IMG/VR virus record: IMGVR_UViG_3300023174_000046
Location: 153,414 to 217,413 of that record
Direction: 5' to 3' (one strand)
DNA: 64,000 nt
Under the pieces are notes generated by a model, which was given only the letters and a program-made list of their open reading frames with translations, did no database searches and was not told where the DNA came from. The position numbers and the translations under genes were made by a program. Positions 10,672 through 60,086 of the stretch are shown piece by piece; the stretch's first letter is position 1; every line of letters starts with the position of its first letter.

Positions 10672-11748
10672 ATGGAATGCACAGCAGTCACGCCAGTAAC
10701 AGCGTTCGTTAGTACCAATCTTAATAGTAAAATCACTAATTATAATAGATTAGGTGAACGAATTTCACGTGCGCTTGGCGCCCCATTAATCAATCTTGAA
10801 GTACATCAAGATCAACTGTATGAGAACATATCTATTTCTGCAGAAATGTTTACTAAATTTGCTGGTTATACAGAAGAGCTTCTTGTATTTGATTCTGATT
10901 TGTATGTTGATAATGTTGGGTTGAGATTAGATCAATTATATTCTATAACACCATTCTTTAACCGTGTAAATGTTAACGCTAGTGTGGTGTTTATTGCAAA
11001 CACTGCTGTACCGAGCAGTGTATTTTCTGCTTCTTCATCTTTGAGTGCCACTTATGCAAGCGGGTTGTTTACAAATCAAATTCTCAATCAAACATTATAT
11101 GGTGCTATTACTGCGTATAATCTTGCTTTAAGTTCTTACTTTACACCATCTCAACCAAGCACAACACAATACGTTAATAGTTTTGATTATGACATAATGG
11201 ACTACCGCAAGGTAATAGATATTACAGATTTCGAAGAAGGATCAACAACCGGTGTCAATACATTGTTCACTATTGAACAAACTTTAGCTCAACAAACTTA
11301 TTTTAGTTATGCAATGGGCAATTATGGTTTTGATCTTATCAGTTGGGTTGTTCTTAAGAACTGGTTAGATACCCGTGAAAAAGTTTTAGCACAAAGAAGA
11401 TATATTCAATTTGACGATCGTACACAAATGATGACCATGTTCCCACCTCCTCGCACACCTGGAAGTGGTCATCGTTTCTATGGTGTAATTTCTTGCTACG
11501 TGGAAAGACCTCTGCGTGATATTATTAAGGAACCTTGGGTCTATCAATACGCTCTCGCATTGACCAAGATTAACATTGGTCAAGTCCGTGGCAAATATAA
11601 TAACATGAATTTACTTGGTGGTGGTGTGTTGAATTACAACGACATGCTACAGCAAGGTTTAGCCGAAAAGAAAGAATTGGAAGAAAGGCTTTATACAGGT
11701 GCGCCTGGGCTTGGAGATGTTGCTCCACCACAATTCTTCTTGGGCTAA
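10672..11748 (+). CDS. gp13: Neck protein, T4 gp13-like
   Basis: RALGAPLINLEV N-terminus; WVYQYALALTK..IG..RGKY....L.GG.LN C-terminus. Confidence 0.85.
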   Translation: MECTAVTPVTAFVSTNLNSKITNYNRLGERISRALGAPLINLEVHQDQLYENISISAEMFTKFAGYTEELLVFDSDLYVDNVGLRLDQLYSITPFFNRVNVNASVVFIANTAVPSSVFSASSSLSATYASGLFTNQILNQTLYGAITAYNLALSSYFTPSQPSTTQYVNSFDYDIMDYRKVIDITDFEEGSTTGVNTLFTIEQTLAQQTYFSYAMGNYGFDLISWVVLKNWLDTREKVLAQRRYIQFDDRTQMMTMFPPPRTPGSGHRFYGVISCYVERPLRDIIKEPWVYQYALALTKINIGQVRGKYNNMNLLGGGVLNYNDMLQQGLAEKKELEERLYTGAPGLGDVAPPQFFLG

Positions 11749-11749
11749 C

Positions 11750-12202
11750 ATGTTCGTTAAAAACGACAGATACAATCAAGGCATTTACAAGCCGATCAAT
11801 CCACAAAAATACAGAGGCAAAGGATATGCCATATATCGCTCTGGATACGAATTAAAATTCTTCAAATGGTGTGATATGAATTCCAGAGTGCTTGAGTGGG
11901 GTAGCGAGAATTTTGTAATACCATATCTCAATCCTCTGGATAGTAAGTATCATCGATATTTTGTTGATAACTATGTAAAGATCAAATTAGATAACAATAT
12001 AATAGAAAAGTATCTAATAGAGATAAAGCCTTTTAAACAAACGCTTAAACCTGTTAAAGGTAATAAGAAAAATACAACGTTTATCTATGAAGCTAAAACA
12101 TATGTTCAGAACCGTGCTAAATGGGATGCTGCAAAAGCCTTCTGTGATCAAAAGGGTTTTAAGTTTTTAATCATTACAGAGAACGAGCTAAACATTAAAT
12201 AA
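11750..12202 (+). CDS. gp4: Head completion nuclease, T4 gp4-like
   Basis: YKPINPQKYRG, YRSGYE, W.SE..IPY, HRYFVD, EIKP, KWDAA, ITE. Confidence 0.92.
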   Translation: MFVKNDRYNQGIYKPINPQKYRGKGYAIYRSGYELKFFKWCDMNSRVLEWGSENFVIPYLNPLDSKYHRYFVDNYVKIKLDNNIIEKYLIEIKPFKQTLKPVKGNKKNTTFIYEAKTYVQNRAKWDAAKAFCDQKGFKFLIITENELNIK

Positions 12203-12919: not shown

Positions 12920-14533
12920 ATGATCCTCGAGGCTATAGATGGCAGTATATTAATTGCGCTTGATGATGCAATCTTACTAGATGTAGGAAGTACACCGCCC
13001 GCTCCAGACACAAATTATACAGAACTCCCACAAGGTGAACCTCTTACACTTTCACTTCAAAGTTACAACTTGTTAAGAACCAACGGTGTGTATTTGTGTG
13101 GAGCTGATTATTCATCAGTAACTGATTATTTGAGTACAGGGTTTTTCGATGGTTACGTAAATGTTGAAGATTTTAAAAACACAAAAAGTTTATCTGGGTA
13201 TTTTCCTTCGTTCTCTGCATATAAAATTTCAACAAATGCATACAGAGTAGCAAATAATAATATTATTGATGTAAAGTTACCGCCAGTAGCAATTTCATAC
13301 GATACAGATGCATCGTTTAATATTATTGTAAAAAATACAGGTGGGTATAGTAAGAGCAGGTTATATTACCCAGCTAGCATCGAACCTTCACCAACGCCCA
13401 CACTAACTGTCACACCAACTGTCACACCAACTGTCACACCTACAGTAACGCCATCTGCAACACTCCCACCCCCTTTACCAAAGAAATTGCTTAGCACAGG
13501 AAACAATTTATATGGTCAATTGGGATTGGGCAACAGTGGTGCTAGTACAAGCAGAAACACTCTCACTCCATTGACTGGCAATTGGTTACAGGTCACATGT
13601 GGGTATTGGCACACCATGGCGCTGTCTGCTGGTGCTACAAAATGGTTTAGCGCAGGAAGCAATTTCAGTGGTCAATTAGGATTAGGATTGGAATTTGGTA
13701 ACACCAGAAGCACATTCACTCCATTGACTGGCAATTGGAGTCAGATGGCATGTGGTCACAGCTACACCATGGCACTGTCTGCTGGTACTACTCGGTTGTT
13801 TGGCACAGGACTCAATTCCTTTGGTGGTTTTGGATTGGGTGATACAGTTCGGAGAAACACCTTCACTGCACTGACTGGCAACTGGTCCCAGATGGCATGT
13901 GGTGTGGGTCACACCATAGCATTAAGTGCAGATACAGACAGGTGGTTTATCACAGGAGACAATTTCAGCGGTCAATTAGGCTTAGGTGACAGTGGCAGCG
14001 CTACTGATAGACTCACTTTTATAGCATTGACTGGCAATTGGTCACAAGTCAGATGTGGTGGGTATCACACCATGGCACTGTCTGCTGGTACTACTCGGTT
14101 GTTTGGCACAGGAAACAATAGCAGCGGTCAATTGGGATTGAGCGACACAACTAATAGAAACACTTTCACTGCATTGACTGGCAATTGGTCACAAGTCATA
14201 TGTGGAAGCGAACTTACCATAGCATTAAGTGCAGATACAGACAGGTGGTTTATCACCGGGCGGAATGACAATGGTCAATTGGGATTGGGTGATACAGTTC
14301 AGAGAAACACCTTCACTGCATTGACTGGCAATTGGTCACAGTTTGCATGTGGTAGGTTTCACACCATGGCACTGTCTGCTGGTACCGATGCATGGTTTGG
14401 CACAGGAAACAATAGCAGCGGTCAATTGGGATTGGGTGATACAGTTCAGAGAAACACCTTCACTGCATTGACTGGCAATTGGTTACAATTCATATGTGGA
14501 AGCGAACACACCATGGCATTGAGCGCTACATAA
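12920..14533 (+). CDS. RCC1-repeat beta-propeller protein, probably virion-associated
   Basis: Seven GxNxxGQLGLG...W.Q..CG..HT.ALSA repeats after a PT-rich linker. Confidence 0.85.
   Translation: MILEAIDGSILIALDDAILLDVGSTPPAPDTNYTELPQGEPLTLSLQSYNLLRTNGVYLCGADYSSVTDYLSTGFFDGYVNVEDFKNTKSLSGYFPSFSAYKISTNAYRVANNNIIDVKLPPVAISYDTDASFNIIVKNTGGYSKSRLYYPASIEPSPTPTLTVTPTVTPTVTPTVTPSATLPPPLPKKLLSTGNNLYGQLGLGNSGASTSRNTLTPLTGNWLQVTCGYWHTMALSAGATKWFSAGSNFSGQLGLGLEFGNTRSTFTPLTGNWSQMACGHSYTMALSAGTTRLFGTGLNSFGGFGLGDTVRRNTFTALTGNWSQMACGVGHTIALSADTDRWFITGDNFSGQLGLGDSGSATDRLTFIALTGNWSQVRCGGYHTMALSAGTTRLFGTGNNSSGQLGLSDTTNRNTFTALTGNWSQVICGSELTIALSADTDRWFITGRNDNGQLGLGDTVQRNTFTALTGNWSQFACGRFHTMALSAGTDAWFGTGNNSSGQLGLGDTVQRNTFTALTGNWLQFICGSEHTMALSAT
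13490..14530 (+). repeat. Seven ~150-nt tandem RCC1-coding repeats
   Basis: Recurrent TGACTGGCAA(T/C)TGG and CACCATGGCACTGTCTGCTGGT blocks. Confidence 0.85.
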
Positions 14534-14606
14534 TAATTGTATAGTTTCTTAAATGGTCTTTAATTTTAGACAAGTTATTCGTAAGGAATTTTAATAAATA
14601 TATACA

Positions 14607-17600
14607 ATGCCAACGTATAAGAAATTTACAGATTTTAGTCTTGTAACTGCACCTGCAGACGCAGATTTCATAGTGGGCTACAAGGCAGATGCATCTGCGG
14701 AGCAACGCACCACAGTGAATGATTTGCTCAGTACAAGTCTTGCCTCCAAAGGTGTATTTTTACAGGGTGACCTAAGTGTTGCAATTGGTGGTGATGGTAA
14801 CACGGTCAATTCACAATGCATGGCCATTGGTGACGCAAATGTTGCTCAGGGGCTCAATTCTTTGGCTCAGGGTTATTCCAATGTTACAGCTTTACTGTAC
14901 AGCACTGCTATGGGCTATAACAACAAAGCAACAGGTGATGTGGCATTTGCACAAGGTGATTCCAATCAGGCCACAGGTGAAGCCAGCTTTGCACAAGGCA
15001 CTCTCAACATTGCAGAAGGTACAGACAGTCAAGCACAAGGCTTCCGCAACATTGCTTCAGGTCCTTATTCACATGCACAAGGCTACAACAATTGCACTGG
15101 AGGCTATGTGACCGGTAACATTTCATATGGTGCTGCACATGCACAAGGTGGTTACAATGTGGTGGCCATTCCACTTGCACATGCACAAGGTTTTGCAAAC
15201 AAAATTGGTTATTATGAATATGCAGATTGGTATGCAACCAACCCACCTCGCCTGGGATTTGGTTACAGTGACCGAACTTTATCCGGTTTGAATGTGTATG
15301 GTTTGAACAATCCTGCATTGAGTTCTTCTGTGCGATTGTTTTTCATTGGTGACAATGGTATCAATACATATTCTGCCTGTGTTTCCTGCACACAGGCCAA
15401 TTACTATGATCCATTTAGTCAAACAACTGGATTTACAATTTTCTTAAAAAATGATGCATCTGCTGTATTGCCTGCAGACGACTACTATAGTCCTTCAATC
15501 ATATGTGTGCCTATCACAGCATATGATGGATCCACCAGTTTCAGTAACTTTGGTGTTGCAGCTTATGCACAAGGCCTTCAAAATGTTGTAGCTGGTAATT
15601 ACGCATATGCGCAAGGAATTAGCAATACAGCTCAAGGATATGCCAGCCATGCAGCAGGTTATGCCAGTAGCACAGGACCAAATGCAGTATATGCTTTTGC
15701 ACATGGTTACAATTGCATAGCTTATGGTCGTTATAGCCATGCCATAGGCATAAAAGCATATGCACAGCATGATAACAGTTATGTGTGGAATTCTGATCCA
15801 AATCCTACAGGAAATTATTTTACTTCATCTCTGAGTGCACAATACAGTGTGAATGCACCCGGTGGCATTGTGCTCAGTGGAGGCAACACATCAGTGCAAG
15901 GGTTGGTAGTTAAGAATGGAAATAATATAGTTGCAGAACTTACTGATGGGACCAAAAACTGGATCTATGGTGGTTTAAGCGCCAGCACATTGTTTGGTTA
16001 TGGCAACAGTGCAGGCTTTTTCTATAGAGGCATAGGTCTTGCCACTGGCAATGTAGCTGTTAGTATCAATGGTGTTGCAAATTATGCTAATAGTGGGATC
16101 ACAGATATTAATGGGGCATATAATTTTGTTTATAGTGATCTAGGCAGAGTTTCTGGTATTTCAAATGTGTTGGGTATGGAGAGTGGATCTGTGGAAGGAG
16201 CCCTCAACACAGTTGGTTCACCTTTTACCATATCAAGAATAGTTTCAGCTTCAAATACCATATTTGTTCATTCTACTTTCATAAACAACAATACCAATAG
16301 TTTTTATTTTAGACCTAATCAAGTCATACAGATAGATGGCATAGTGGGCAATACTTATAATAACTCAGCTGCCAGCAGAGTAAACACCCGCTTCACAGTT
16401 GTATCATCTGACACAACAGCCAGATCAATTACTGTTGTTGAATCTGTAACAGCAATGCAAGATTACCGAGACAATCAGCCATTTACCGATCAAAGATATG
16501 TTGTGGCAGTACAAGGCCGTAATACAAGCAATACTTTAAATGTAGCGGGTGCTCATGCTGAGGGTATGGGTAATACGGTTTTTAGTCGAGCAGGGCATGT
16601 TGAGGGAGAAGCTAATGTAGTTACCGGTTCAGATGGACATGCAGAAAATTTTGGTAATTTTGCTGCCACTGGTGCACATGCAGAAGGTAATGAGAACCGG
16701 GCCGGTTTTGGTGTTCTGTATTTTGATTCCTATAATGCCAGTACAAAGACTTTTCAGTTGTTTACAAACTTTCTCAGCGCACATAACACCATTGATCTTC
16801 CTCTCACACCAAACTCTACTCTGTATTTTATTAATGTAGCTGCTGGCGCTTCAAACAAAAGAAAATTTACTAGATTTTTGGTGCTTTCATCAGATCCAGC
16901 GCTCAACACAGTAACAGCTTTATCAGCTGTGTATCCTGATGACATACCTAGTTCAGGAGTTTCTACATTGACCCGTGCAAAACAATTGCTTCAATCACTC
17001 AATAGTTATACACATGCAGAAGGATCATTCAATAATGCAAAAGGTCCATCAAGCCATGCAGAAGGTGCATTTACTATAGCTCAAGGATCTTATTCACATG
17101 CTGCAGGTGTCAATGCAACTGCCAAGCAAGATTATACATATGCATGGAGTAGCAATGATGGTGCTGGTCCTCAAAGCAATCGTAAGAACACAGAAACAAC
17201 TCGCACTGGCCAATACATGGTGTCAGCACATGGCGGCATATTCTTCCCTGGCAAAGTGGGCATTGGCACTGATAGCATAGAAAATGCATTAACTGTAGCT
17301 GGTACCATATCTGCTACTACCATAACAGCAGATAGCATTTCATACAATGGTGCAGGGTTCAATACATTACCCACATACAAAACTTACCAAGTCAATTTAG
17401 CTGCTAAAAATTCTGCATGGCCTGTCATTTCAGCTGCACAGCTAGCTGAAACTGGTTACTATGATAGTGGTGCTGCATATGCCATGCCTGGCGGTCTTGT
17501 CATCAAAGGTCATTCACCTGCTTACAACACCAGCATTCAAAACTTACCTGGTTATGGCACATACGGCATGTGGCTTCAAGGTGTAGATCAAATGGATCCA

Positions 17601-19304
17601 GGTACCACTTTTGTGAGTGATGGGCGTGCTGCAGTAACTCATGCCATGACATTCCGAGCAGGTATCAATAACTTTACCGGGGGATCAGATCATAATCACG
17701 TGCAATGGCAAGGCGCCCCTTCCAATCCTACCCAAGCATGGCAAATGACCAATGGTGGATCAACAAGTGTTTATGGTTATGGTGCCAATACATATTCACA
17801 AAGATTTCTTGTACATACACTGCCACAATATCAAATCAGTACCACCATTGCAGCTGTTAGCGGTTTCCTTGACACTCAATCAGCTACCCTTGGTGCAGAT
17901 TCAGATACACTGTCAGGAGTTAAACTTATTCTTGATACTACTGCTGGAGTAGGCAATTATGGGTTAATTAATGTGGGAGAGGTGGTTGGGTTTGTAGTTA
18001 ATCCGGGATTGGTAGGCTTGGTTGCTGCAGCTTACGAAACACAATGCACATTAATTTCATCCAATAACACTGGTACATTATCGACATTTCAATTTAATTT
18101 CTTTATTGGTAACGGTGACAACTGGAGCTCTGCAAACAGAGGTATTCAACCAGTTAATTTAAAATCTAGAGCTGAAGGAGGCAATCCAGGCGTAAATCAA
18201 GTTACAAGTCAAATTGGTACCCCCAGCACACAGTACATAGGTCTCACCGGCAGTTACAGAGGCATGAACAAGCATTGCTTAGCCCGCTTCACTACAGGTG
18301 ATATTTTAACTGGCTTCAAGCCAGGCTCTCCTCTCACATTGTGGGTACCTAAGAGCATGCCATCATCTTCTCCAATTGGCTCTGGTTTCATCACATCTGA
18401 TAAAATTTCAACCTTTGCACAAGGCACATTCCCCACTGGTGTGCGCACAGGTTATTTTGATGCTTATGTAGTGAATGTGAGTGGTGGAGACATGGAATTT
18501 GCTTTGTGTAACTTGATGGATTCATATGGATTTGAAAACAGGTCTTGGCCCATATCTGCTGCTGGAAATGCGGGGTGGTTGTTGTACGGTGGCACACAAG
18601 ACACAGTGCATAGACCCACATTTGGTACTGCTGGTTTTTATTTTGAAAGAGAACCTTGGTACTTTTCTGGCCCGGATTATAACTACCTAAGCGGTGGCAT
18701 GGTCAAGTGTGTTGGCTTAGGTAACTCAGAGGTGTATGGTGATTACTCTTATGGCTTGGGTTACCGTGGTGCTGTGTTAGGTAAGAAGTCCGGTACATTT
18801 GCAGGTGATTACAATGCAGTATTTGGTGATAATTCAGTAGCCATCGGTGGCAGTAATTTAATCTCTACAAGTGGCAATCAGGTAGTCATTGGCACGTATA
18901 ACAACCCCAACACCAATTCATTGTTTGTAGTTGGCAGCGGCGCATCAGATAAAAATAGAAAGAATGTATTTGAAGTAAAAGGAAATGGAGACACTACACA
19001 GTCTGGATTTAATATTAGAAGTTTCTCTCTTATTGCTGCTGCTGGTAGCAATCAAGCAACTGCTACAGAAATAACAACAGAAATTGTTACTGTTACCGGA
19101 GGTACCGGTGGTGTTAGATTGCCTGTTACAAATGGAGGTCATTACATAACATTAAATAATAGAAACATAGCTTTCTCACTTTACCCTCCCGTAGGTGGTA
19201 TAATCATAGATCAGAGTATTGGTGTTAATCAACCATATGTTAGCCAGTGGTTCGGTAGCTTGATTATGTATTCGATTAGCGCTAATACCTGGGCACTTTA
19301 CTAA
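14607..19304 (+). CDS. Long tail fibre/adhesin with YadA-head-like repeats
   Basis: SHAQG/SHAEG repeats, GKVGIGT motif, LFVVGSG...RKNVFEV; late TAAATA at 14595. Confidence 0.8.
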   Translation: MPTYKKFTDFSLVTAPADADFIVGYKADASAEQRTTVNDLLSTSLASKGVFLQGDLSVAIGGDGNTVNSQCMAIGDANVAQGLNSLAQGYSNVTALLYSTAMGYNNKATGDVAFAQGDSNQATGEASFAQGTLNIAEGTDSQAQGFRNIASGPYSHAQGYNNCTGGYVTGNISYGAAHAQGGYNVVAIPLAHAQGFANKIGYYEYADWYATNPPRLGFGYSDRTLSGLNVYGLNNPALSSSVRLFFIGDNGINTYSACVSCTQANYYDPFSQTTGFTIFLKNDASAVLPADDYYSPSIICVPITAYDGSTSFSNFGVAAYAQGLQNVVAGNYAYAQGISNTAQGYASHAAGYASSTGPNAVYAFAHGYNCIAYGRYSHAIGIKAYAQHDNSYVWNSDPNPTGNYFTSSLSAQYSVNAPGGIVLSGGNTSVQGLVVKNGNNIVAELTDGTKNWIYGGLSASTLFGYGNSAGFFYRGIGLATGNVAVSINGVANYANSGITDINGAYNFVYSDLGRVSGISNVLGMESGSVEGALNTVGSPFTISRIVSASNTIFVHSTFINNNTNSFYFRPNQVIQIDGIVGNTYNNSAASRVNTRFTVVSSDTTARSITVVESVTAMQDYRDNQPFTDQRYVVAVQGRNTSNTLNVAGAHAEGMGNTVFSRAGHVEGEANVVTGSDGHAENFGNFAATGAHAEGNENRAGFGVLYFDSYNASTKTFQLFTNFLSAHNTIDLPLTPNSTLYFINVAAGASNKRKFTRFLVLSSDPALNTVTALSAVYPDDIPSSGVSTLTRAKQLLQSLNSYTHAEGSFNNAKGPSSHAEGAFTIAQGSYSHAAGVNATAKQDYTYAWSSNDGAGPQSNRKNTETTRTGQYMVSAHGGIFFPGKVGIGTDSIENALTVAGTISATTITADSISYNGAGFNTLPTYKTYQVNLAAKNSAWPVISAAQLAETGYYDSGAAYAMPGGLVIKGHSPAYNTSIQNLPGYGTYGMWLQGVDQMDPGTTFVSDGRAAVTHAMTFRAGINNFTGGSDHNHVQWQGAPSNPTQAWQMTNGGSTSVYGYGANTYSQRFLVHTLPQYQISTTIAAVSGFLDTQSATLGADSDTLSGVKLILDTTAGVGNYGLINVGEVVGFVVNPGLVGLVAAAYETQCTLISSNNTGTLSTFQFNFFIGNGDNWSSANRGIQPVNLKSRAEGGNPGVNQVTSQIGTPSTQYIGLTGSYRGMNKHCLARFTTGDILTGFKPGSPLTLWVPKSMPSSSPIGSGFITSDKISTFAQGTFPTGVRTGYFDAYVVNVSGGDMEFALCNLMDSYGFENRSWPISAAGNAGWLLYGGTQDTVHRPTFGTAGFYFEREPWYFSGPDYNYLSGGMVKCVGLGNSEVYGDYSYGLGYRGAVLGKKSGTFAGDYNAVFGDNSVAIGGSNLISTSGNQVVIGTYNNPNTNSLFVVGSGASDKNRKNVFEVKGNGDTTQSGFNIRSFSLIAAAGSNQATATEITTEIVTVTGGTGGVRLPVTNGGHYITLNNRNIAFSLYPPVGGIIIDQSIGVNQPYVSQWFGSLIMYSISANTWALY

Positions 19305-40614: not shown

Positions 40615-41543
40615 GCCCACTGTGCTGTAAACGGCGTTGTGTAGTTTGTAAATGTGTTTGTAGCTGTCTTGTAAAGCTCAAAGCTATTAACTTGTATATA
40701 AGCCTGGTAACCATCATCCACATTGATGAATGTGCCATTAACCACAAACACATCTGCTGTGAGTGCTGGTGAGAACAGTGTCATACCAGCAGTTAGATTA
40801 GCTCTTGCTTGTGTGCTTGTAGCAGCACGAATAGATTCTGTTGCAAGCTTCATTCTTGTACCAATACCAGAAGTTGTTTGAAGCGAAGTTACATAATTAG
40901 CTGTTAAAGCTTTTCTTGTTGTTGTATCATCCCATAGAATTTTATTCAAGACATATTGCTGATAGTTGTTACCTGTACCGTAACCGGCGCCACCGGTACC
41001 AAAAGGAAATACATCACCACTTAATGGTGCAGTACTAGAAAGAGCATTGCTTGCTGTACCATAAACAGCAGGATTTACTAATCTATTCACAGCAACACCA
41101 ACAGCACCGCAAGTGTTTGAAAGTTCATTGCCTTGACCTCTTCTGAGCATGTAACCCAAATAGCCGCTCAAAGAGCATACACCAATATGAGGAGCAGAAA
41201 ATAACATTAATGCACCATTGGTAGCATATTGTATGTGTGAAGCCCATGCAAAGAGTGCAATTCTCCCAGTATGCGGGTAACCACCAATGCCACCTGCAAA
41301 AAATGGTCCTTGAAAATCATTCAAAGTAGCAGGCATTTGACCAATATTGTTATTGTAATAAGCTGGTGCATTTGCATCATCTGAACAAATTGAATCGGCT
41401 AATAAAACATTGTTGGCGCTATACCCACATAATGTTTGAATAAACGTTTTGCAATATCTGCCAAAATCTTCCACAAGAATGGCTCCAGGGTAGGCAGAAG
41501 CTGCTGTTACTATTGAGGTGTATGTTGATTGTGATATTGGCAT
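40611..41543 (-). CDS. LCIB-family (theta-type) carbonic anhydrase-like protein, copy 2
   Basis: ICSDD, GPFFAGGIGGYPHTG, APHIG, RRGQ, TCGA. Confidence 0.8.
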   Translation of the reverse strand: MPISQSTYTSIVTAASAYPGAILVEDFGRYCKTFIQTLCGYSANNVLLADSICSDDANAPAYYNNNIGQMPATLNDFQGPFFAGGIGGYPHTGRIALFAWASHIQYATNGALMLFSAPHIGVCSLSGYLGYMLRRGQGNELSNTCGAVGVAVNRLVNPAVYGTASNALSSTAPLSGDVFPFGTGGAGYGTGNNYQQYVLNKILWDDTTTRKALTANYVTSLQTTSGIGTRMKLATESIRAATSTQARANLTAGMTLFSPALTADVFVVNGTFINVDDGYQAYIQVNSFELYKTATNTFTNYTTPFTAQWA

Positions 41544-41551
41544 AAAAAATA

Positions 41552-42652
41552 TTAGTTGAGTTGTAATCCTGATTTAAATTGTGTAGTAAAGTCTTCGAAG
41601 GTATCTGTGGTCTTGTTGTATCTTAAGAAGTTTGTTACATCTGCATAAGCTTTAAATCCATCATCCACGTTAATAAATGTACCAGTGCTCAAGAACACAT
41701 CAACATTTCTGCCAGGGAACGCTGTTCTATAAGCAAGCTTGAATGTGCTGTTATTGTCAGGTTTAGCAATAATATTGAAAGCAGAGTTGCGAATTGCTTC
41801 TGTGGCCAATATCATTTGCTGCCCGAAGTCTGATGTTGCACAAATGGCTGTGCGTGCTGTTACATCATCATAAATTGCCTTGACAAGAGTATAGAATTGA
41901 AAATCCGATGCATTTGTTAACAATACATCAAGTGGATCAGGGCTAGGCCATTGAGGAGCAGGGCCGCTTACACCATTGTTTCTGATCCAATCAACAGCAG
42001 CTGCTGCAGCACCACAAGTTGCAGAAAGATTACCATAATTTTGACCGCGGCGTCTCATGTAACCTACTTGACCATCGCGAGTGATGCCAATGTGAGGGGC
42101 TATGTACAAGAATAGAGCACCTCCACTTGTGACGTGTGATGCATAAGCAAGGAGCCCTGTGGTACCAGTGTGTGGGTAACCATCTAAGCCGCCACCCATG
42201 AATGGTCCAAGGAAAGTTTGCAATGATTGAGGCATTTGACCGAGATTATTAATATTATTAAACACTGGTCCGTTCACATCATCAGAGCAAATAGATGATG
42301 AAAAGAGAACATTGCTTGGAGTGTAAGCAGCACTTACCGATTGAATATAAGTTTGTACGCGAAGACCAAAGTTTTCAGCTGTTGCAGCAGTTGGGTATGT
42401 CTTTCTTACCACATCACCATAATCAAGTTGTTGCGAAACTGGACCAGAATCAGATGTTAAACTGGAACCATGCATTAAGTTGTTATTCTCTAGTTCTGCA
42501 CGAGCTGCTTGTACTCTTTCTTCTATGATTTGTTGTTCAAATAAGAATTTCTTTTGAAAATCGGCTGATTGTGGCCTGCTAGGCACAACTACGGGGTTGC
42601 GAGGGCGACCATCATATTGCTTTAACCCATCTACATATTGCCTAGGAATCAT
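41552..42652 (-). CDS. LCIB-family (theta-type) carbonic anhydrase-like protein, copy 1, with N-terminal extension
   Basis: ICSDD, GPFMGGGLDGYPHTG, APHIG, RRGQ, TCGA; start MIPRQ 5 nt after TATAAATA. Confidence 0.82.
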   Translation of the reverse strand: MIPRQYVDGLKQYDGRPRNPVVVPSRPQSADFQKKFLFEQQIIEERVQAARAELENNNLMHGSSLTSDSGPVSQQLDYGDVVRKTYPTAATAENFGLRVQTYIQSVSAAYTPSNVLFSSSICSDDVNGPVFNNINNLGQMPQSLQTFLGPFMGGGLDGYPHTGTTGLLAYASHVTSGGALFLYIAPHIGITRDGQVGYMRRRGQNYGNLSATCGAAAAAVDWIRNNGVSGPAPQWPSPDPLDVLLTNASDFQFYTLVKAIYDDVTARTAICATSDFGQQMILATEAIRNSAFNIIAKPDNNSTFKLAYRTAFPGRNVDVFLSTGTFINVDDGFKAYADVTNFLRYNKTTDTFEDFTTQFKSGLQLN

Positions 42653-42657
42653 GTAAT

Positions 42658-42679
42658 TATTTATATTTAACAATAAATA
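42658..42679. promoter_or_regulatory. Back-to-back T4-type late promoters
   Basis: TATAAATA on minus (42658-42665) and TAAATA on plus (42674-42679), each 5-6 nt from an ATG. Confidence 0.75.
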
Positions 42680-49545: not shown

Positions 49546-50454
49546 ATGAAAATGGATCTTAAAATTAACTCAACGTCGTTCGTCGACATCAATCAAGTAA
49601 ACATTCCGGATGCGTTCTACAGGAGAATGACCTCTGGTATTGAACAGCTCGATAACCTGTTTGGCAGTGGCCTGCTTCCTGGCAGTACTATTACTATTGC
49701 GGCTCGAGCAGGTCTAGGCAAAACTACTCTAATGCTACAATTGCTTCAAGGTCTTGTTAATACAGGTCATGAAGTAGGTTATTGTTCTAATGAAGAATCA
49801 ATTGAGCAATTGGCCATGACTTGTAAGCGTCTCAACGTTAATAACATTCGTGCTTGTAATGAATCTAATGTTGATGTTATTAGCTCTTACATGGATAAGT
49901 TTGATGTGCTTGTTGTGGATTCCTTTCAAGGACTCAGCAAGGGCAATCTATCCGGTCGAGCTCTAGAGAAGTATTGTATTGAGAAGCTCATCAAGAAAGC
50001 TAAAAGCTCTGAATGTGTTCTCATTCTAATCTGTCACAATACTAAGGCAGGTCAGATCAAGGGCAGTTCATTGATCATTCATGCAGTTGATGTGAATATC
50101 GCTATTGAACCTGTTAAAGATGCAGAGATCAATGCACGTCGCATTGTGTTCAATAAAAATCGCTTTGGTCCTTCGAACGATCTGGAATGTTATATTGAGC
50201 AGAATGGTTATGACTTTCAGTCGGAGGTTGCTCTATTGGGCGAAGAAGGTGTCAAGCCGTCCAAGAAGAAAGCCAAGAACCAGCAACGTGAGCAGATCTT
50301 AACCATGGAAGATATCTCCATCAAGGGTGTTTGTAAGTTGTTAGGTATTGATGCAACGAGAGCTGGCTTTCTCCTTCGAGAGCTTCAACTTGAAGGTGTC
50401 ATTGTGAAGGAAGGTCGCGGTGCAGATGCGCGATGGGTTAAAGAGGTGGCTTGA
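49546..50454 (+). CDS. RadA/Sms-like RecA-family ATPase with C-terminal HTH-like region
   Basis: SGIEQLDNLFG.G, ARAGLGKTT, VVDSFQ, H.TKAGQIKG, KNRFG. Confidence 0.85.
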   Translation: MKMDLKINSTSFVDINQVNIPDAFYRRMTSGIEQLDNLFGSGLLPGSTITIAARAGLGKTTLMLQLLQGLVNTGHEVGYCSNEESIEQLAMTCKRLNVNNIRACNESNVDVISSYMDKFDVLVVDSFQGLSKGNLSGRALEKYCIEKLIKKAKSSECVLILICHNTKAGQIKGSSLIIHAVDVNIAIEPVKDAEINARRIVFNKNRFGPSNDLECYIEQNGYDFQSEVALLGEEGVKPSKKKAKNQQREQILTMEDISIKGVCKLLGIDATRAGFLLRELQLEGVIVKEGRGADARWVKEVA

Positions 50455-50945
50455 AGGTAGGATTCAATTGCAGCTCGTTTGACCTCTTGCATGCAGGGCA
50501 TGTCACAATGCTTCGTATGGAAAAAGAACTCTGTGATTATCTCAAAGTAGCTTTGCAGGTTGACCCAACAATTGATAGGCCGGGTATTAAAAACAAACCT
50601 GTGCAGAGTGTTTACGAGAGATACATACAGCTTCAAGCATGCAAGTATGTTGATGAAATTCTCGTTTATAGTACAGAATTTGATTTGTTACAATTGTTGA
50701 TGACACAAACAGTGCATGTACGTTTCTTGAGTGAAGAATACGAGAACAGAGACTTTACAGGTAAACAATACTGCATTGATAATGGAATAGAATTGCATTA
50801 CCATAAGCGTCGTCATGTGTATTCTTCCAGTGAATTGCGCGAAAGAACGGCAAATTTAGAAAGCGCCAAGAAAGAATCTACTGTAGAGGTTCCACCTCAA
50901 TATTCTCCCAAGCTAATAAAAATGCCTAGCAACGTAATCAGCTAA
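50451..50945 (+). CDS. Glycerol-3-phosphate cytidylyltransferase-like (TagD-like)
   Basis: SFDLLHAGH, YVDEI, YSSSELR. Confidence 0.88.
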   Translation: MKVGFNCSSFDLLHAGHVTMLRMEKELCDYLKVALQVDPTIDRPGIKNKPVQSVYERYIQLQACKYVDEILVYSTEFDLLQLLMTQTVHVRFLSEEYENRDFTGKQYCIDNGIELHYHKRRHVYSSSELRERTANLESAKKESTVEVPPQYSPKLIKMPSNVIS

Positions 50946-56634: not shown

Positions 56635-57705
56635 TCACAAGGACCATTTTTCAGTCAAATAAGAATTAACTGCAATCAATTCTGCATCAGTCAGAATTCT
56701 TTCATAAGCAAAAAATTCTCCAATGACACCATTGAAGTAGGCAATTTCAGAAACAAATCTGCGTCCAATGGCAACTTTGGCAGCATTGGTAGTAGATGAA
56801 TTGCCTTTGGTTTGAAAATCAGGATCTGATCCTGCAGCAGCACCATTGAACAATATGTCCACTTCGCCTGCTGCATAGTTAATTTTGGCTGTTATGATGC
56901 CAGGAGCAGTGTTATTCTTGAATGTGGCAGTGCTGATATCAGCAGGTGCTCCTTTGTCGTTCAAATCAGAATCAAGTCTCCTGCCTCCAGCTGCAAAATA
57001 CCATCCTTCATCATCAGCAGGGGCACCTGGTATCACAGATGGATTGCTCATGAATTTGATTCTGGAACCATTGCCTCCTCCTGGGCTAGGTCTGGTGGTG
57101 GTGAAAATAGCTTCAGGAAGTACAATGCCTGTGTTAGGATTGCCAAACTGTGCCACACAAACCAATGTGATGCCCGCCACATTGTTGGCAAAAGTGAGGG
57201 AGTTCGCATTACCGTTCAAATGATTGCCACTGTTGGAATCAAATTTTAGGTAATTCATGCCTTGGTAGGATGACAGAGCTGGACGAATGAGGCTGTTGGA
57301 TTGTTCAAAGTGTCTGTTGTTTGTGCTCAAGTCCAGCCATGTGGCCACTGGTGTGTTGAGAGCACAAGGGTTGCCAGATGCATCCAACACACTGACTCTG
57401 CGACTTGAATCAAGCCATATGCCTGGATTTGCAGCAGGGGGCACAAGTGGGTTGCTTCCAGCGCTGCCTGGATCTGCTCCAATGCCCATGGCCGCATCTC
57501 TGGATGCACCATGGTGTTCCAATTGTTTGCGAGCTTCTTGTATGATGCGCATTTGTTGCTGTTGATCAAAAGCCATGCTATCATTAATCATTCGCTTCTG
57601 TTGTTGATTGGGAAGCGCCGGACGCCAAGTGTTGGTATCTGGAGGATAAACTACATTTCTCCCCGGATCAGTGAGCGCATTTAAATAGTCATCAAACCAG
57701 TCCAT
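56635..57705 (-). CDS. Late protein: MDWFDDYL leader module + LamG/ConA-like domain
   Basis: WLDSS...VATWLDLS...F.G.IGE...Y.R.LT..E...V..YL..KW. Confidence 0.75.
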   Translation of the reverse strand: MDWFDDYLNALTDPGRNVVYPPDTNTWRPALPNQQQKRMINDSMAFDQQQQMRIIQEARKQLEHHGASRDAAMGIGADPGSAGSNPLVPPAANPGIWLDSSRRVSVLDASGNPCALNTPVATWLDLSTNNRHFEQSNSLIRPALSSYQGMNYLKFDSNSGNHLNGNANSLTFANNVAGITLVCVAQFGNPNTGIVLPEAIFTTTRPSPGGGNGSRIKFMSNPSVIPGAPADDEGWYFAAGGRRLDSDLNDKGAPADISTATFKNNTAPGIITAKINYAAGEVDILFNGAAAGSDPDFQTKGNSSTTNAAKVAIGRRFVSEIAYFNGVIGEFFAYERILTDAELIAVNSYLTEKWSL

Positions 57706-57713
57706 AACAGTAT

Positions 57714-60086
57714 TTATCCTGGTAAATTCTTAACAACAGTTATATTAGTACCACCTGCTATGCTTTGACCTGCACCAGCAGTCCAGGTGGCATCGCTGGC
57801 TCGAGCATATATTGTACGGCCATTGAGAGTACTTAATGAACCTGCTTCATACACAGTCAATGGAGCAAAGGAACTGATGGTGAGCAAGCTTGTGCAGTTG
57901 TATAAAAACAATCCTCCAATAGATGCAATGCCATTGGGTATGAGTATATTGGTTAAAGACGGGTTTTGTGCAAATGCATAACTGCAAAGGATTGCAGTGC
58001 TAGTGTTTGCTATGTTCACAGCAGTTAATGAGTTTAAATTGAATGCAAATCGACCAACTATGGACACGCTGCCGGGTATGCTCACAGACTTTAACGCATT
58101 GCTTGCAAATGCACCATCACCAATGTATGTTACATTGCTGGGTATATTCACTGCAGACAAATTGTTGCCTTGAAATGCATTGGTACCTATGCTTGTCATA
58201 TTGTTAGGTATAGTTACAGCAGACAATTGATTGTATAAGAATGCACCTATACCTATGCTTGTCATATTGTTAGGTATGTCTACAGCAGACAATTTGTTTT
58301 GTGCAAATGCATAGTCAGGTACAAAATTTATACCAGTCCCCAGTGTAAGGATGGATATATTGTTGCTTTGAAATGCACCTCCACCCATGCTGGTGACAGT
58401 GTCAGGTATGCTCACAGCAGACAATTTGTTGCCGTAGAATGCAAATAAATTAATATTTGTCACGCTGTTGGGTATGGTCACAGCAGACAAATTGTTTAGG
58501 CTAAATGCATAATTTCCTATGGTTGCAACGCTACTGCCCAATGTCAAGAAGGATATGGTGTTGCTTTGAAATGCATAATTGCCAATGGCTGTCACACTGT
58601 TGGGTATGTTCACAGCAGATAATTTCTGGTTATTGAATGTACTTGAGCCAATATATTGCACACTGTTGCCCAGTGTCAAGGAGGATATGTTGTTGCTTTG
58701 AAATGCAGTAGAATCAATATATGTAACTGAGTCTGGTATGTTAACTACAGTTAATTTGTTGTTACCAAATGCATACTCTCCTATGTATGTGACACCATTG
58801 GGTATGGTTGCAGCAGACAAATTGTTGTTGGCAAATGATTGATATGCAATGTTGGTCACACCATTGGGTATGACAATGTCATTCAATCGATTGTCCTTGA
58901 ATGCCTGGTATGATGTGAAGGACAGACCAGTTGGCAGTGTTACAGCAGACAATGCATTGGCAGCAAAAGACAAAGATGCACCAGCTGCACCTTGCTTGGG
59001 CAAACTAACTGCACTCAACTTGTTGTTGGTGCAATACAAGTTTGATATATTCCTACTGCTAGCCACATCCAGGTATGTTAATGCATTGTAATTGCAATTC
59101 ATTTCTTTTAATGCAGAAAGGCTTGACACATCCAGAGATGACAGACTGTTGTAATTCACATAAAGATATTGTATGTTGTTGCATCCTGAAAAATATATGG
59201 AAGAAAGAAGCAATCCTCCTGTTCCAGAGCTGTAATAGCCTTCATAATTATTAACAAAAACACTGATTAGCTTAGGAAGATTGGTGAAAGTAAAAGATGT
59301 GAATTGATTATTTTGCATATAAATAACTTCTAAATCCGTGCATCCAAAAAGATTCACAGATGATAGCCGATTGGATGCAATATTAACAGAGTTTATTTTG
59401 TTGTTGTTGGAAAGATTCAGTGTGGTAAGTTTACCGCCGGGCGCCTGTAAAGATGTTAAGTTCGGAACATTAGTCAGATTGATGGCGGTTAAATTATTGT
59501 TGATACAGTAGAGAGAATGAAGACTGCTGAGACCAGATGCTTGAACAGAAGATAGAACATATTGAAAACCGGCATCATGTTGATAGCTACAATCCAGTAA
59601 CTCTAGTGCAGGCATCTGAGCAGACAGATTGTTCAAAGATGTAAACCAATTAGAATTGCAGTTCAACTGCTTCAGCTTGTGCAAGCCAATGACAGGCAAA
59701 CTTGTAAGTTTATTGCTATTGCAATCTAGTATTTCAACATTTTGCAAATCAAACCCCGTGGTAGGGTCAATTGAATCCCACCCACCCAGCATAGTGGCTA
59801 TTTGCAAATGCTTTACCACTGGTGACAGTATCAGGTCTTCCTGTTCTATGTTATTGTATGACACGTTTAGTTTTGTTGCCAAGGGAAACTGTGTGGCATC
59901 AAAATAATCAAACAAATTGCTGCTCACATCCAGAGTCACAATATTATTTTTACCTGTGATTGCTTGCATCCAGCTGTTCAGCTGACATTCAGCCATGGTC
60001 AAATCCAACTGAGAACAACGGGATGCATCCACACCCTGCATGGGTATTCCTGCAACGTATAACCGGTTAATTTTACCTGTTTTCAT
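57714..60086 (-). CDS. Leucine-rich repeat protein (internalin-type LRR + BspA/LRR_5)
   Basis: L.C..N.L..L repeats then IP.SVT.IG..AF..N.L repeats; in frame with the upstream ORF across one TGA. Confidence 0.88.
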   Translation of the reverse strand: MKTGKINRLYVAGIPMQGVDASRCSQLDLTMAECQLNSWMQAITGKNNIVTLDVSSNLFDYFDATQFPLATKLNVSYNNIEQEDLILSPVVKHLQIATMLGGWDSIDPTTGFDLQNVEILDCNSNKLTSLPVIGLHKLKQLNCNSNWFTSLNNLSAQMPALELLDCSYQHDAGFQYVLSSVQASGLSSLHSLYCINNNLTAINLTNVPNLTSLQAPGGKLTTLNLSNNNKINSVNIASNRLSSVNLFGCTDLEVIYMQNNQFTSFTFTNLPKLISVFVNNYEGYYSSGTGGLLLSSIYFSGCNNIQYLYVNYNSLSSLDVSSLSALKEMNCNYNALTYLDVASSRNISNLYCTNNKLSAVSLPKQGAAGASLSFAANALSAVTLPTGLSFTSYQAFKDNRLNDIVIPNGVTNIAYQSFANNNLSAATIPNGVTYIGEYAFGNNKLTVVNIPDSVTYIDSTAFQSNNISSLTLGNSVQYIGSSTFNNQKLSAVNIPNSVTAIGNYAFQSNTISFLTLGSSVATIGNYAFSLNNLSAVTIPNSVTNINLFAFYGNKLSAVSIPDTVTSMGGGAFQSNNISILTLGTGINFVPDYAFAQNKLSAVDIPNNMTSIGIGAFLYNQLSAVTIPNNMTSIGTNAFQGNNLSAVNIPSNVTYIGDGAFASNALKSVSIPGSVSIVGRFAFNLNSLTAVNIANTSTAILCSYAFAQNPSLTNILIPNGIASIGGLFLYNCTSLLTISSFAPLTVYEAGSLSTLNGRTIYARASDATWTAGAGQSIAGGTNITVVKNLPG

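What the first reader, a model, noticed from the sequence alone, without database searches (positions are those of the whole stretch)
10672..60086. L-S-A / L-[ST]-[AG] tripeptide stamped onto unrelated virion-type folds: candidate sequon for phage-directed virion glycosylation
Seen: LSA occurs 7 times (plus LTG 7 times) in the RCC1 protein and 11 times in the LRR/BspA protein. The tail fibre has 4 LSA and 4 LSG (plus ISA/VSA/VSG), gp13 has one LSA, and the two LCIB proteins carry LSG/LTA/LSA. The equally Ser/Thr/Ala/Gly-rich 810-aa PEP-CTERM protein, which targets the host envelope, has no LSA. Established: BspA repeats usually read L-[TK]-S-[VI]-x-IP and RCC1 repeats AL-K/T-x-DG, whereas here they read LSAVxIP and ALSAG/ALSAD. 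Phage-encoded glycosyltransferases are known to glycosylate some actinophage virions, and short Ser/Thr O-glycosylation sequons exist in bacteria. The window encodes GT31-like and NodZ-like transferases, RmlB, a UDP-Glc dehydrogenase-like protein, a PIG-L deacetylase and a cytidylyltransferase. Inference: a sequon-based modification system coating the particle. Caveat: repeat amplification inflates the counts.
Basis: partly seen in the sequence, partly recalled or inferred. Interest (0 to 1): 0.8.

Follow-up and report, generated by a model that had tools for sequence, protein, structure and literature searches.

The report
Leu-Ser-small motif on phage tail proteins
A group of uncultured T4-like phages carries the short motif Leu-Ser-(Ala/Gly/Ser) three to five times more often than expected on its large tail and host-recognition proteins. 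The excess is real and conserved, but it looks more like a structural habit at the ends of beta-strands than a proven sugar-attachment site.

Summary
In the RCC1 and LRR proteins, every LSA sits at one fixed repeat position, so each protein counts as one event. Inside the window only the 1565-aa fibre adds independent signal; gp13, the LCIB pair and everything else are at background.

With RCC1 and LRR removed, L-S-[AGS] is the top-ranked of 400 'xy[AGS]' patterns in proteins of at least 400 aa (82 observed, 29.7 expected, z about 10). Nine orphan baseplate or fibre giants drive it (57 vs 12.4). All ten sequenced relatives (portal 61-84% identical) show the same excess (O/E 2.05-3.0). Syn9, T4 and S-SRM01 do not (1.14-1.26).

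The enriched families share no detectable homology. The tripeptide is a local peak of conservation. Cellular or distant homologs of two of three folds lack it (distant RCC1 O/E 1.9).

Glycosylation remains untested. Head, neck and sheath-block proteins are at background. No NodZ, O-FucT or GT1 gene was found. The GT31/Fringe-like gene is absent from several enriched relatives. In the models the Leu-Ser pair ends beta-strands, and LRR and RCC1 consensus sequences already place a hydroxyl residue there.

Best reading: a lineage-specific structural motif (about 0.5). A Ser-directed modification sequon stays open (about 0.2).

The parts
12920..14533 (+). 537-aa protein. It has an N-terminal module, a Thr-Pro linker and a 7-blade RCC1 propeller. 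LSA occurs once per blade (Leu codons at 13622, 13775, 13922, 14078, 14225, 14372, 14519), and LTG once per blade.
   Evidence: Pfam WD40_RLD 1e-52 and RCC1 x7. Repeat register. AF2 pLDDT is above 95 for the propeller; Leu and Ser are the last two strand residues and Ala is the first loop residue. Coordinates.
13385..13480 (+). Thr-Pro-rich linker (aa 156-187) between the N-terminal module and the propeller.
   Evidence: The same type of linker precedes the RCC1 domain in relatives.
14607..19304 (+). 1565-aa putative tail fibre. It has 10 LS[AGS] sites in varied, non-repeat contexts (4 LSA, 4 LSG, 2 LSS).
   Evidence: LS[AGS] 10 vs 2.74 expected, P 5.6e-4. Contexts. phrog_25468 match and an N-terminus paralogous to the G000 13771-15648 fibre-like protein.
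57714..60086 (-). 790-aa leucine-rich-repeat protein. The N-terminal half has typical LRRs (N-x-L-S-S-[LV]). The C-terminal half has BspA/LRR_5 repeats reading N-x-L-S-A-V-x-I-P. It carries 11 LSA and 16 LS[AGS] in all.
   Evidence: Pfam LRR_5 3.9e-96 plus LRR_4/LRR_8. Site list. Homolog comparison.
56635..57705 (-). 356-aa LamG/ConA-like protein next to the LRR gene. It is a paralog (69% identity) of a module of the 1365-aa giant at G000 4343-8440. It has no LSA.
10672..11748 (+). gp13-like neck/adaptor protein with 1 LSA, which is background.
   Evidence: phrog_211, 8.3e-19. LSA 1 vs 0.17 expected, P 0.15.
26152..28584 (+). 810-aa PATR / PEP-CTERM protein with 0 LSA and 1 LS[AGS].
   Evidence: Pfam. 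LSA 0 vs 0.69 expected, so the absence is uninformative.
40611..42673 (-). Two LCIB-type beta-carbonic-anhydrase-like genes (310 aa and 373 aa). These are metabolic proteins, not virion folds.
   Evidence: PF18599, 4.1e-20 and 7.2e-31. Motif counts.
1..471 (+). C-terminal part of a 254-aa GT31/Fringe-like glycosyltransferase. The ORF is G000 153120-153884 and starts 293 nt upstream of the window.
   Evidence: PF01762 4.5e-13 in six frames. Galactosyl_T 2.9e-12 and Fringe 2.2e-6 on the protein. Weak match to human B3GALT5.
410..1114 (+). PIG-L family de-N-acetylase.
   Evidence: PF02585, 1.7e-16.
4907..5683 (+). Short (258 aa) UDP-glucose/GDP-mannose dehydrogenase-like protein.
   Evidence: PF00984 2.2e-15 and PF03721 2.5e-13.
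36108..37073 (-). RmlB-like NDP-sugar 4,6-dehydratase/epimerase.
   Evidence: PF16363 1.5e-79 and PF01370 8.7e-65.
50451..50945 (+). Cytidylyltransferase-like nucleotidyltransferase.
   Evidence: PF01467, 1.3e-11.

Best explanation
L-S-[Ala/Gly/Ser] is most likely a lineage-specific structural motif. A core Leu closes a beta-strand. The next residue is a Ser whose hydroxyl can cap the backbone of the following turn, in the manner of an ST-turn. A small residue then lets the chain reverse.

This phage clade builds its distal-tail and host-recognition proteins from Leu-rich beta-repeat architectures: LRR solenoids, RCC1 and other propellers, and cryptic repeats in orphan baseplate giants. Such proteins contain many strand-turn junctions. 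The clade has settled on Leu-Ser-small at these junctions where other lineages use Leu-Thr-Ser, Leu-Lys-Asn or longer Asp-Gly loops. Overt and cryptic repeats then multiply the motif.

Shown here: the enrichment, its restriction to tail-module giants, its conservation, and the strand-end position in two models. Inferred: the capping role of the Ser, and the reason for the clade's preference. One possible reason is avoidance of labile Asn-Gly turns in long-lived extracellular proteins.
For: Position in structure:
- In the high-confidence RCC1 model, Leu and Ser are the last two residues of a strand in all 7 blades and Ala opens the loop.
- In the 480-aa propeller-like baseplate protein, [L/Y/M]-S-G sits at two-residue hairpins of successive blades.

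Fold consensus:
- LRR_5 homologs carry Leu-Thr-Ser at the same repeat position (LT[AGS] O/E 6.4).
- The phage LRR's N-terminal half reads N-x-L-S-S-[LV], and relatives carry other LRR types reading L-S-G-x-I-P or L-S-S-L. That matches the canonical LRR consensus. A hydroxyl after the core Leu is therefore native to the fold.

Evolutionary pattern:
- At conserved sites, orthologs interchange LS[AGS] with LT[AG], IS[AG], VSA and LCG.
- Leu is as conserved as Ser at the motif (0.54 each).
- In RCC1 relatives the first residue varies among L, M, I and Q.

Distribution:
- Enrichment is confined to beta-rich tail-module giants (57 vs 12.4) plus RCC1 and LRR (24 vs 4.5).
- It is absent from the conserved T4-like core (9 vs 7.4).
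- Asn-Gly is depleted in the enriched set (42 vs 69.1), against 0.96-1.08 in controls.
- GT31 is absent from relatives that are equally enriched.
Against: - The preference is sharper than a generic strand-turn rule predicts. Neither V/I/F/Y-S-G nor L-[T/N/D]-G is comparably enriched.
- Shuffles that preserve the hydrophobic/polar pattern, or local 30-aa composition, still give 13 +/- 3.6 against 57 observed.
- Cellular or distant homologs of the propeller and of LRR_5 manage without the motif (O/E 0.8 and 0.99); distant RCC1 homologs are in between at 1.9. No fold requires it.
- The enriched families share no detectable homology, so the motif arose repeatedly.
- Ser at motif sites is conserved in 54% of ortholog pairs, against 34% for other Ser. 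It is replaced preferentially by Thr and Cys rather than Ala. An acceptor residue would show the same pattern.
- Not all sites are at strand ends: in the 480-aa model one lies in a helix and two in loops.
Confidence: 0.5

Rival explanations
1. One reading: O-glycosylation sequon. A phage-encoded cytoplasmic glycosyltransferase would transfer a sugar to the Ser of L-S-[AGS] at exposed strand-turn junctions of tail, baseplate and receptor-binding proteins. The candidate enzymes are the clade-wide GT2 or the GT31/Fringe-like protein, fed by the RmlB-like, UGDH-like and PIG-L enzymes.
For: - The enrichment is specific and clade-wide. It is convergent on families with no detectable homology.
- The tripeptide is a conservation peak set in variable flanks.
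- The Ser is more conserved than other Ser and is replaced mainly by Thr or Cys.
- Cellular or distant homologs of two of the three folds lack the motif; distant RCC1 homologs have O/E 1.9.
- GT2 genes occur in this phage and in 9 of 10 relatives.
- The GT31 protein matches Fringe, a family that acts on protein-linked glycans.
- From my own knowledge, not checked here: autotransporter heptosyltransferases recognise a strand / short loop / strand acceptor motif. That would be a precedent for a structural sequon.
- Mycobacteriophage virions are glycosylated by phage glycosyltransferases (Freeman 2023, PMC10527164, as cited in PMC12619734).
Against: - There is no direct evidence of any modification.
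- The Leu is a core residue that an enzyme could not read on a folded protein.
- Asn, Asp, Ala and Gly together replace the Ser about as often as Thr does.
- Thr versions are not enriched (LTG 1.25, LTA 0.5).
- GT31 is present in only 2 of 5 relatives checked.
- NodZ, O-FucT and GT1 are absent.
- Capsid-side, neck and sheath-block proteins are at background, so the particle as a whole is not targeted.
- Phage GT2 and sugar-nucleotide genes have many other known roles, such as DNA or host-envelope modification.
- The Thr-Pro linkers in the same proteins are a more conventional glycan target.
Confidence: 0.2
2. Another Ser- or motif-directed process, such as a different modification (phosphorylation, acylation and so on), or recognition by an assembly chaperone or protease that handles tail-module giants.
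For: The same statistical and conservation evidence as for the sequon reading. The restriction to late, large, tail-module proteins would fit an assembly-linked factor.
Against: No candidate enzyme or chaperone was identified. No extended context surrounds the tripeptide. I know of no such system that uses this tripeptide.
Confidence: 0.1
3. Chance plus repeat amplification. Two repeat families happen to share one tripeptide, and the rest is noise.
For: - Within the window, RCC1 and LRR each collapse to one repeat position, and gp13, LCIB-373 and all remaining proteins are at background.
- The chance that the two repeat consensus sequences share a tripeptide present in at least 5 copies is about 0.08.
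- A comparable FSG excess in S-SRM01 is explained by 12-aa tandem repeats.
Against: - With both repeat proteins removed, LS ranks first of 400 patterns (z 9.6; the next is 3.8). It also ranks first in 7 of 10 relatives, against rank 66-77 in three control phages.
- Nine of 61 proteins of at least 300 aa are outliers at P<0.005, against 0 of 166 in controls.
- The contexts are diverse, and codons cover all six Leu and all six Ser codons.
Confidence: 0.05

Closest known systems
Canonical LRR consensus (LxxLxLxxNxL-[S/T]-x-[L/I/V]; the plant-specific type reads NxL-S/T-GxIP) and BspA-type LRR_5
   Same: The phage repeat N-x-L-S-A-V-x-I-P and its N-terminal N-x-L-S-S-[LV] repeats place a hydroxyl residue straight after the core Leu, as those consensus sequences do. 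Pfam LRR_5 matches at 3.9e-96. Cellular LRR_5 homologs have Leu-Thr-Ser at that position.
   Different: Ser-Ala replaces Thr-Ser; LSA occurs in only 0.5% of 1749 homolog repeats. An Asn occupies the place of the Cys that precedes the Leu in BspA-type repeats.
RCC1 repeat / RCC1-like beta-propeller
   Same: Seven blades, a Pfam match and a confident AF2 propeller. The motif lies at the 'A-L-x-x-[DG]' strand end of each blade.
   Different: A subfamily of about 33 metagenomic proteins reads A-L-S-A-[GD]-T at 70% of blades. The one context I looked up (P0006) lies in a phage structural module. Distant homologs read L-K-N, L-K-T or L-D-S, and cyanophage S-SRM01 reads A-I-K-T-D-G.
ST-turn / Asx-turn side-chain capping motifs at beta-hairpins (general protein-structure knowledge)
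   Same: Ser (exchanging with Thr, Asn or Asp) is followed by a small residue at a strand-to-turn junction.
   Different: The requirement for Leu before it, and the strength of the clade-specific preference, are not features of the generic motif. The hydrogen bond itself was not verified.
Structural acceptor motif of autotransporter heptosyltransferases (AIDA-I/Aah, TibA/TibC)
   Same: This is a Ser-directed cytoplasmic glycosylation of beta-repeat proteins at a short loop between two strands, recalled from my own knowledge. The geometry resembles the LS[AGS] sites.
   Different: No heptosyltransferase homolog was sought or found. The window's own PATR/autotransporter-like protein is not enriched. 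No modification has been shown.
Mycobacteriophage virion glycosylation by phage-encoded glycosyltransferases (Freeman et al. 2023, PMC10527164, cited in PMC12619734)
   Same: Phage-encoded glycosyltransferases modify virion proteins.
   Different: There the glycans sit on the C-termini of the capsid and tail-tube subunits. Here the conserved head, neck and sheath-block proteins are at background, and the motif lies inside tail-module giants.
Bacteroidetes general O-glycosylation sequon D-[S/T]-[A/I/L/V/M/T]
   Same: A three-residue sequon with a hydroxyl residue in the middle and often Ala after it (own knowledge).
   Different: The first residue is Asp rather than Leu. The process is periplasmic, so it could not reach phage proteins that assemble in the cytoplasm.

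Membership tests
RCC1 repeat family (PF00415 / PF25390) | Significant profile match with about 7 tandem repeats of 50 aa | tested here: met
   WD40_RLD 1e-52 and RCC1 7.2e-43 with 7 stretches.
RCC1 repeat family (PF00415 / PF25390) | Seven-bladed beta-propeller fold | tested here: met
   AF2 model with pLDDT above 95 over aa 190-537 and four strands per repeat.
BspA-type LRR (PF13306 LRR_5) | Profile match over multiple repeats | tested here: met
   3.9e-96 with 5 stretches.
BspA-type LRR (PF13306 LRR_5) | Repeat core reading L-T/K-S-[VI]-x-I-P | tested here: not met
   The phage reads L-S-A-V-x-I-P. LTS occurs in 49.7% and LSA in 0.5% of 1749 homolog repeats. It is a sequence variant within the family.
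Protein O-glycosylation sequon system | Acceptor motif over-represented on target proteins beyond composition and repeats | tested here: met
   82 vs 29.7 with repeat proteins removed. Pattern-preserving shuffles give 13 vs 57 observed. All ten relatives are enriched.
Protein O-glycosylation sequon system | Acceptor hydroxyl residue exposed on the folded target | tested here: inconclusive
   The site is at a strand end in the models. K/D/T/N substitutes in RCC1 homologs suggest exposure. Cys substitutes in the propeller family suggest partial burial. No coordinates were available to compute accessibility.
Protein O-glycosylation sequon system | Only Ser or Thr tolerated at the acceptor position over evolution | tested here: inconclusive
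   At motif sites: Ser 54%, Thr 12%, Asn 7%, Asp 3.5%, Ala 3.4%, Gly 3.4%, Cys 2.2%.
Protein O-glycosylation sequon system | A dedicated protein glycosyltransferase that co-occurs with the motif across genomes | tested here: inconclusive
   GT31 is in 2 of 5 relatives although all are enriched. GT2 is in 9 of 10 relatives and so does not discriminate. The relatives' contigs are 25-77% complete.
Protein O-glycosylation sequon system | Glycan detected on the motif Ser | not testable with these tools
   Requires mass spectrometry of virions or of co-expressed proteins.
Phage virion glycosylation of the mycobacteriophage type | Capsid and tail-tube subunits carry the acceptor region | tested here: not met
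   The conserved morphogenesis block, portal, gp13 and gp15 are at background (9 vs 7.4).
ST-turn-type strand-end structural motif | Location at a strand-to-turn junction | tested here: met
   7 of 7 RCC1 sites. Blade hairpins of the 480-aa protein at aa 328 and 375, plus Y/M-S-G equivalents at aa 40 and 117. Other sites in that model lie in loops or a helix.
ST-turn-type strand-end structural motif | Ser side chain hydrogen-bonded to the backbone NH of residue i+2 | not testable with these tools
   Model coordinates are not returned.

The most novel reading that the evidence does not exclude
A whole clade of uncultured T4-like phages marks its baseplate, fibre, RCC1 and LRR host-recognition proteins with a conserved Leu-Ser-small tripeptide. 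This tripeptide would be the acceptor site for a phage-encoded, cytoplasmic, Ser-directed modification, most plausibly O-glycosylation by the clade-wide GT2 or the Fringe-like GT31. It would be the first short sequon described for phage tail proteins.
Probability: 0.2. Interest if true: 0.85.

Novelty: new variant of a known kind. Interest (0 to 1): 0.55.

Why it matters
If the motif is structural, it shows a phage lineage converging on one strand-end solution across unrelated beta-repeat folds. That would give a sequence signature for recognising this clade's fast-evolving receptor-binding proteins, most of which match no known family.

If it is a modification site, it would be the first tail-protein sequon in phages. 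It would assign a function to the glycosyltransferase and sugar-nucleotide genes that are common but unexplained in large aquatic phages. Host recognition, particle stability and resistance to proteases could all be affected.

Either way the question can be tested with recombinant proteins, even though the phage is uncultured.

Tried and rejected
- **DNA-level motif.** Rejected. Sites use all six Leu and all six Ser codons, and the commonest 9-mers come from the RCC1 and LRR repeats.
- **Extended sequon context.** None found from -8 to +10, apart from mild hydrophobicity three to four residues after the motif.
- **Common ancestral domain behind the enriched giants.** HHalign finds no similarity between the five ortholog families. 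It finds only an internal propeller repeat in the 1168-aa protein. BLASTP paralogy is limited to a few shuffled modules.
- **Generic property of large phage structural proteins.** Rejected by Syn9, T4 and S-SRM01.
- **Local composition or hydrophobic-pattern artefact.** Rejected by class-preserving and block shuffles.
- **S-SRM01 FSG excess as an analogue.** It is caused by tandem 12-aa repeats, unlike the case here.
- **Portal-flank loci from 80 relatives.** Too redundant and too short to add anything.
- **Glycosyltransferase searches.** Six-frame Pfam searches for NodZ, O-FucT and GT1 found nothing. Pfam and PHROG scans of ten unassigned ORFs of 186-290 aa found no glycosyltransferase.
- **Database matches.** Megablast of the window against published phages found nothing. 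PDB sequence search gave nothing for GT2 and only a weak B3GALT5 match for GT31.
- **Literature.** Searches found no report of this motif or of glycosylated tail proteins in such phages.
- **psbA.** Absent, so the phage is not a typical cyanomyovirus. The host remains unknown.

Full report
**Setting.** The window is the last 64 kb of a 217,413-bp IMG/VR virus record. It encodes a T4-type portal, a gp13-like adaptor and a gp15-like sheath stabiliser. The portal is at most 35% identical to that of any published cyanomyovirus. The genome has no psbA, so the host is unknown. IMG/VR holds a large uncultured clade with portals 61-98% identical to this one.

**Checking the observation.**
- Measured against each protein's own composition, RCC1 has 7 LSA where 0.40 are expected, and the LRR protein has 11 where 0.90 are expected.
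- In both proteins the tripeptide occupies one fixed position of a highly similar repeat. RCC1 blades read H-T-M-A-L-S-A-G-T, and LRR repeats read N-x-L-S-A-V-x-I-P. After repeat collapse each protein contributes one event.
- The chance that two such repeat consensus sequences share a tripeptide present in at least five copies is about 0.08.
- The fibre keeps an independent excess: LS[AGS] 10 vs 2.74, P 5.6e-4.
- gp13 and LCIB-373 are at background. LCIB-310 is nominally high (L[ST][AG] 5 vs 0.98).
- The zero in the PEP-CTERM protein is uninformative (0 vs 0.69 expected).
- All window proteins other than RCC1, LRR and fibre together show 21 LS[AGS] vs 18.9 expected.

**Checking the enzymes.**
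- PIG-L, a truncated UGDH-like protein, an RmlB-like dehydratase and a cytidylyltransferase-like protein are confirmed.
- The GT31 gene is real and also matches Fringe, but its ORF starts upstream of the window.
- No NodZ, O-FucT or GT1 family gene is detectable in six frames of the whole genome.
- A GT2 gene lies at G000 57866-58630.
- The LCIB proteins are carbonic-anhydrase-like, not virion folds.

**The signal is larger outside the window.**
- Genome-wide, LSA occurs 59 times where 24 are expected.
- With RCC1 and LRR removed, proteins of at least 400 aa hold 82 L-S-[AGS] where 29.7 are expected. Smaller proteins hold 59 vs 45.5.
- Sequence shuffles give 29.5 +/- 5.3, so z is about 10.
- Among all 400 'xy[AGS]' patterns, LS ranks first (z 9.6; the next is 3.8).
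- Nine of 61 proteins of at least 300 aa are outliers at P<0.005. In Syn9, T4 and S-SRM01 combined the figure is 0 of 166. Their large proteins have O/E 1.14-1.26, and LS ranks 66th to 77th.
- The carriers are large proteins matching few or no Pfam/PHROG families. Most lie just downstream of a gp6-like baseplate gene (G000 118919-129642 and 137306-142448). The rest are two fibre-like proteins and a 1365-aa giant.
- Those nine hold 57 sites vs 12.4 expected, with LSG in 9 of 9 and LSA in 8 of 9.
- The conserved T4-like morphogenesis proteins hold 9 vs 7.4.

**Controls for artefacts.**
- Codons at the sites are diverse, so the constraint acts on the protein and not the DNA.
- No extended sequence context exists around the tripeptide.
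- Shuffles that keep the hydrophobic/polar pattern, or 30-residue local composition, still give about 13 +/- 3.6 against 57.
- The preference is specific. V/I/F/Y-S-G and L-T/N/D-G are not comparably enriched.

**Clade-wide replication.** I fetched ten relatives (contigs of 52-162 kb, portals 61-84% identical). All have O/E 2.05-3.0 in large proteins. LS ranks first in seven of them and second in one, behind Thr-Pro repeats.

**Independence of the enriched families.**
- Profile-profile comparison finds no homology among the five ortholog families tested.
- BLAST paralogy is limited to a few shuffled modules.
- In the alignment of the 1168-aa family, some sites are shared across 37-39% identity. 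Many others are lineage-specific gains.
- Across five ortholog alignments the three motif positions are 0.54, 0.54 and 0.48 identical. Flanking positions are 0.29-0.45 and the overall mean is 0.42.
- Ser at motif sites is retained in 54% of ortholog pairs, against 34% for other Ser. Its substitutes are Thr, then Asn, then Asp, Ala and Gly at similar levels, then Cys. Thr and Cys are over-represented and Ala under-represented relative to baseline.

**Homologs elsewhere.**
- LRR_5 homologs read LTS at 49.7% of 1749 repeats and LSA at 0.5%. Their LS[AGS] O/E is 0.99, but LT[AGS] is 6.4.
- Distant RCC1 homologs read LKN, LKT or LDS (O/E 1.9). About 33 close metagenomic homologs read LSA at 70% of blades (O/E 6.0).
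- One of those close homologs lies inside the structural module of a 160-kb phage contig, next to gp13, the prohead protease and gp23.
- Cyanophage S-SRM01's RCC1 reads A-I-K-T-D-G.
- Close homologs of the 480-aa propeller-like baseplate protein are enriched (3-7 sites vs about 1 expected). Its distant multi-repeat homologs are not (87 vs 108.5).

**Structural context.**
- The RCC1 model is confident (pLDDT above 95). In all seven blades Leu and Ser are the last two residues of a strand and Ala opens the loop. LTG lies in the loop between two other strands.
- The 480-aa model is moderate (pLDDT 63). It places L-S-G, and the equivalent Y-S-G and M-S-G, at two-residue hairpins of successive blades. 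Homologs replace these with L-C-G or I-S-G. Other sites in that protein fall in loops or a helix.
- In the LRR protein both repeat types read N-x-L-S-[SA]-[LVI]. Relatives carry other LRR types reading L-S-G-x-I-P or L-S-S-L. This is the canonical LRR position for a hydroxyl residue.

**Interpretation.** Three points are shown.
1. L-S-[AGS] is a real, specific motif.
2. It is conserved across the clade.
3. It arose repeatedly on tail-module and host-recognition proteins.

What the motif does is not shown. I favour a structural reading (about 0.5): Leu closes a strand, Ser caps the turn, and a small residue permits the reversal. Overt and cryptic beta-repeats then multiply it. Four observations support this:
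- the strand-end position of the motif in the models;
- the native hydroxyl residue at that position in LRR and RCC1 consensus sequences;
- Leu being as conserved as Ser at the motif;
- the exchange of LS[AGS] with LT, IS and LC variants in homologs.

Depletion of Asn-Gly in the enriched set (42 vs 69.1; controls about 1.0) hints at selection on turn chemistry in long-lived extracellular proteins, but that is speculative.

The sharp specificity, the convergence, the conservation peak in variable flanks, and the near-universal GT2 genes all fit it. Against it:
- no link to any enzyme has been shown;
- GT31 is missing from enriched relatives;
- the Thr version of the motif is not enriched;
- the conserved head, neck and sheath-block proteins are untouched;
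- the Thr-Pro linkers in the same proteins would be a more conventional glycan target.

It does not explain the genome-level signal.

**Limits.**
- ORFs were called mechanically.
- The relatives' contigs are 25-77% complete, so the absence of a gene from them is weak evidence.
- Only three control phages were used.
- The nine 'orphan' proteins were grouped partly because they were enriched. The unselected tests (all proteins of at least 400 aa, and the pattern ranking) do not depend on that grouping.

Noticed in passing
window 13385-13480 (RCC1 aa 156-187); window 7330-7716; G000 4343-8440, 66226-69168, 126271-128187: Thr-Pro linkers (TPTVTP-type; 157 TPT in the genome) join modules of several large structural proteins, and they precede the RCC1 domain in relatives too. 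Linkers of this kind are classic O-glycosylation targets in other systems, so they are a more conventional candidate substrate for the phage glycosyltransferases than LSA.
   Followed up: partly
window 11699-12202 (+): A TnsA-N-like endonuclease-domain ORF (PF08722, 3.3e-19) sits between the gp13-like and gp15-like genes, where gp14 would be expected. The same order (gp13, then a TnsA-like ORF) occurs in a related 160-kb contig (L157).
   Followed up: partly
window 1-5683: A gene cluster lies directly upstream of the morphogenesis genes. It comprises a GT31/Fringe-like protein, a PIG-L deacetylase, a PhyH-type dioxygenase, a 472-aa tryptophan-halogenase-like flavoenzyme (8.6e-84), an unassigned 225-aa ORF and a truncated UGDH-like protein. 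The combination suggests synthesis of a modified sugar or small molecule.
   Followed up: no
window 26152-31169: A run of host-envelope-type genes: an 810-aa PATR/PEP-CTERM protein, a prepilin-type N-methylation-motif protein (222 aa) and a FecR-like protein (313 aa). None carries the LS[AGS] excess.
   Followed up: no
window 56635-57705 (-) and 12920-13430 (+) versus G000 4343-8440: Evidence of module shuffling. The 356-aa LamG-like protein is 69% identical to aa 618-878 and 52% identical to aa 1083-1365 of a 1365-aa giant at the other end of the genome. The RCC1 protein's N-terminal module (aa 36-170) is 36% identical to aa 84-210 of the same giant.
   Followed up: partly
window 14607-19304, fibre aa 650-820: Five H-A-E-[GN] repeats (G-x-H-A-E-G type) lie in the fibre. 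HAE and SHA are among the most over-represented tripeptides in the genome and are confined to two fibre-like proteins.
   Followed up: no
window 8888-10663 and loci L041-L120: The portal family carries no LS[AGS] at all in 73 orthologs (61-98% identity) against a summed composition expectation of 39. Shared ancestry makes this hard to evaluate.
   Followed up: no
window 40611-42673 (-): Two adjacent, divergent LCIB-type carbonic-anhydrase-like genes, also present in relatives G002 (74-79% identity) and G005. This is unusual cargo for a phage that lacks psbA.
   Followed up: no
enriched protein set of G000 (incl. window 12920-19304 and 57714-60086): The Asn-Gly dipeptide is depleted (42 vs 69.1 expected, O/E 0.61), whereas it is 0.96-1.08 in large proteins of Syn9, T4 and S-SRM01. 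Asp-Gly is not depleted.
   Followed up: partly
proteins P0023, P0024, P0029 (metagenomic homologs): Natural fusions of an LRR_5 domain with an LSA-type RCC1 propeller.
   Followed up: no
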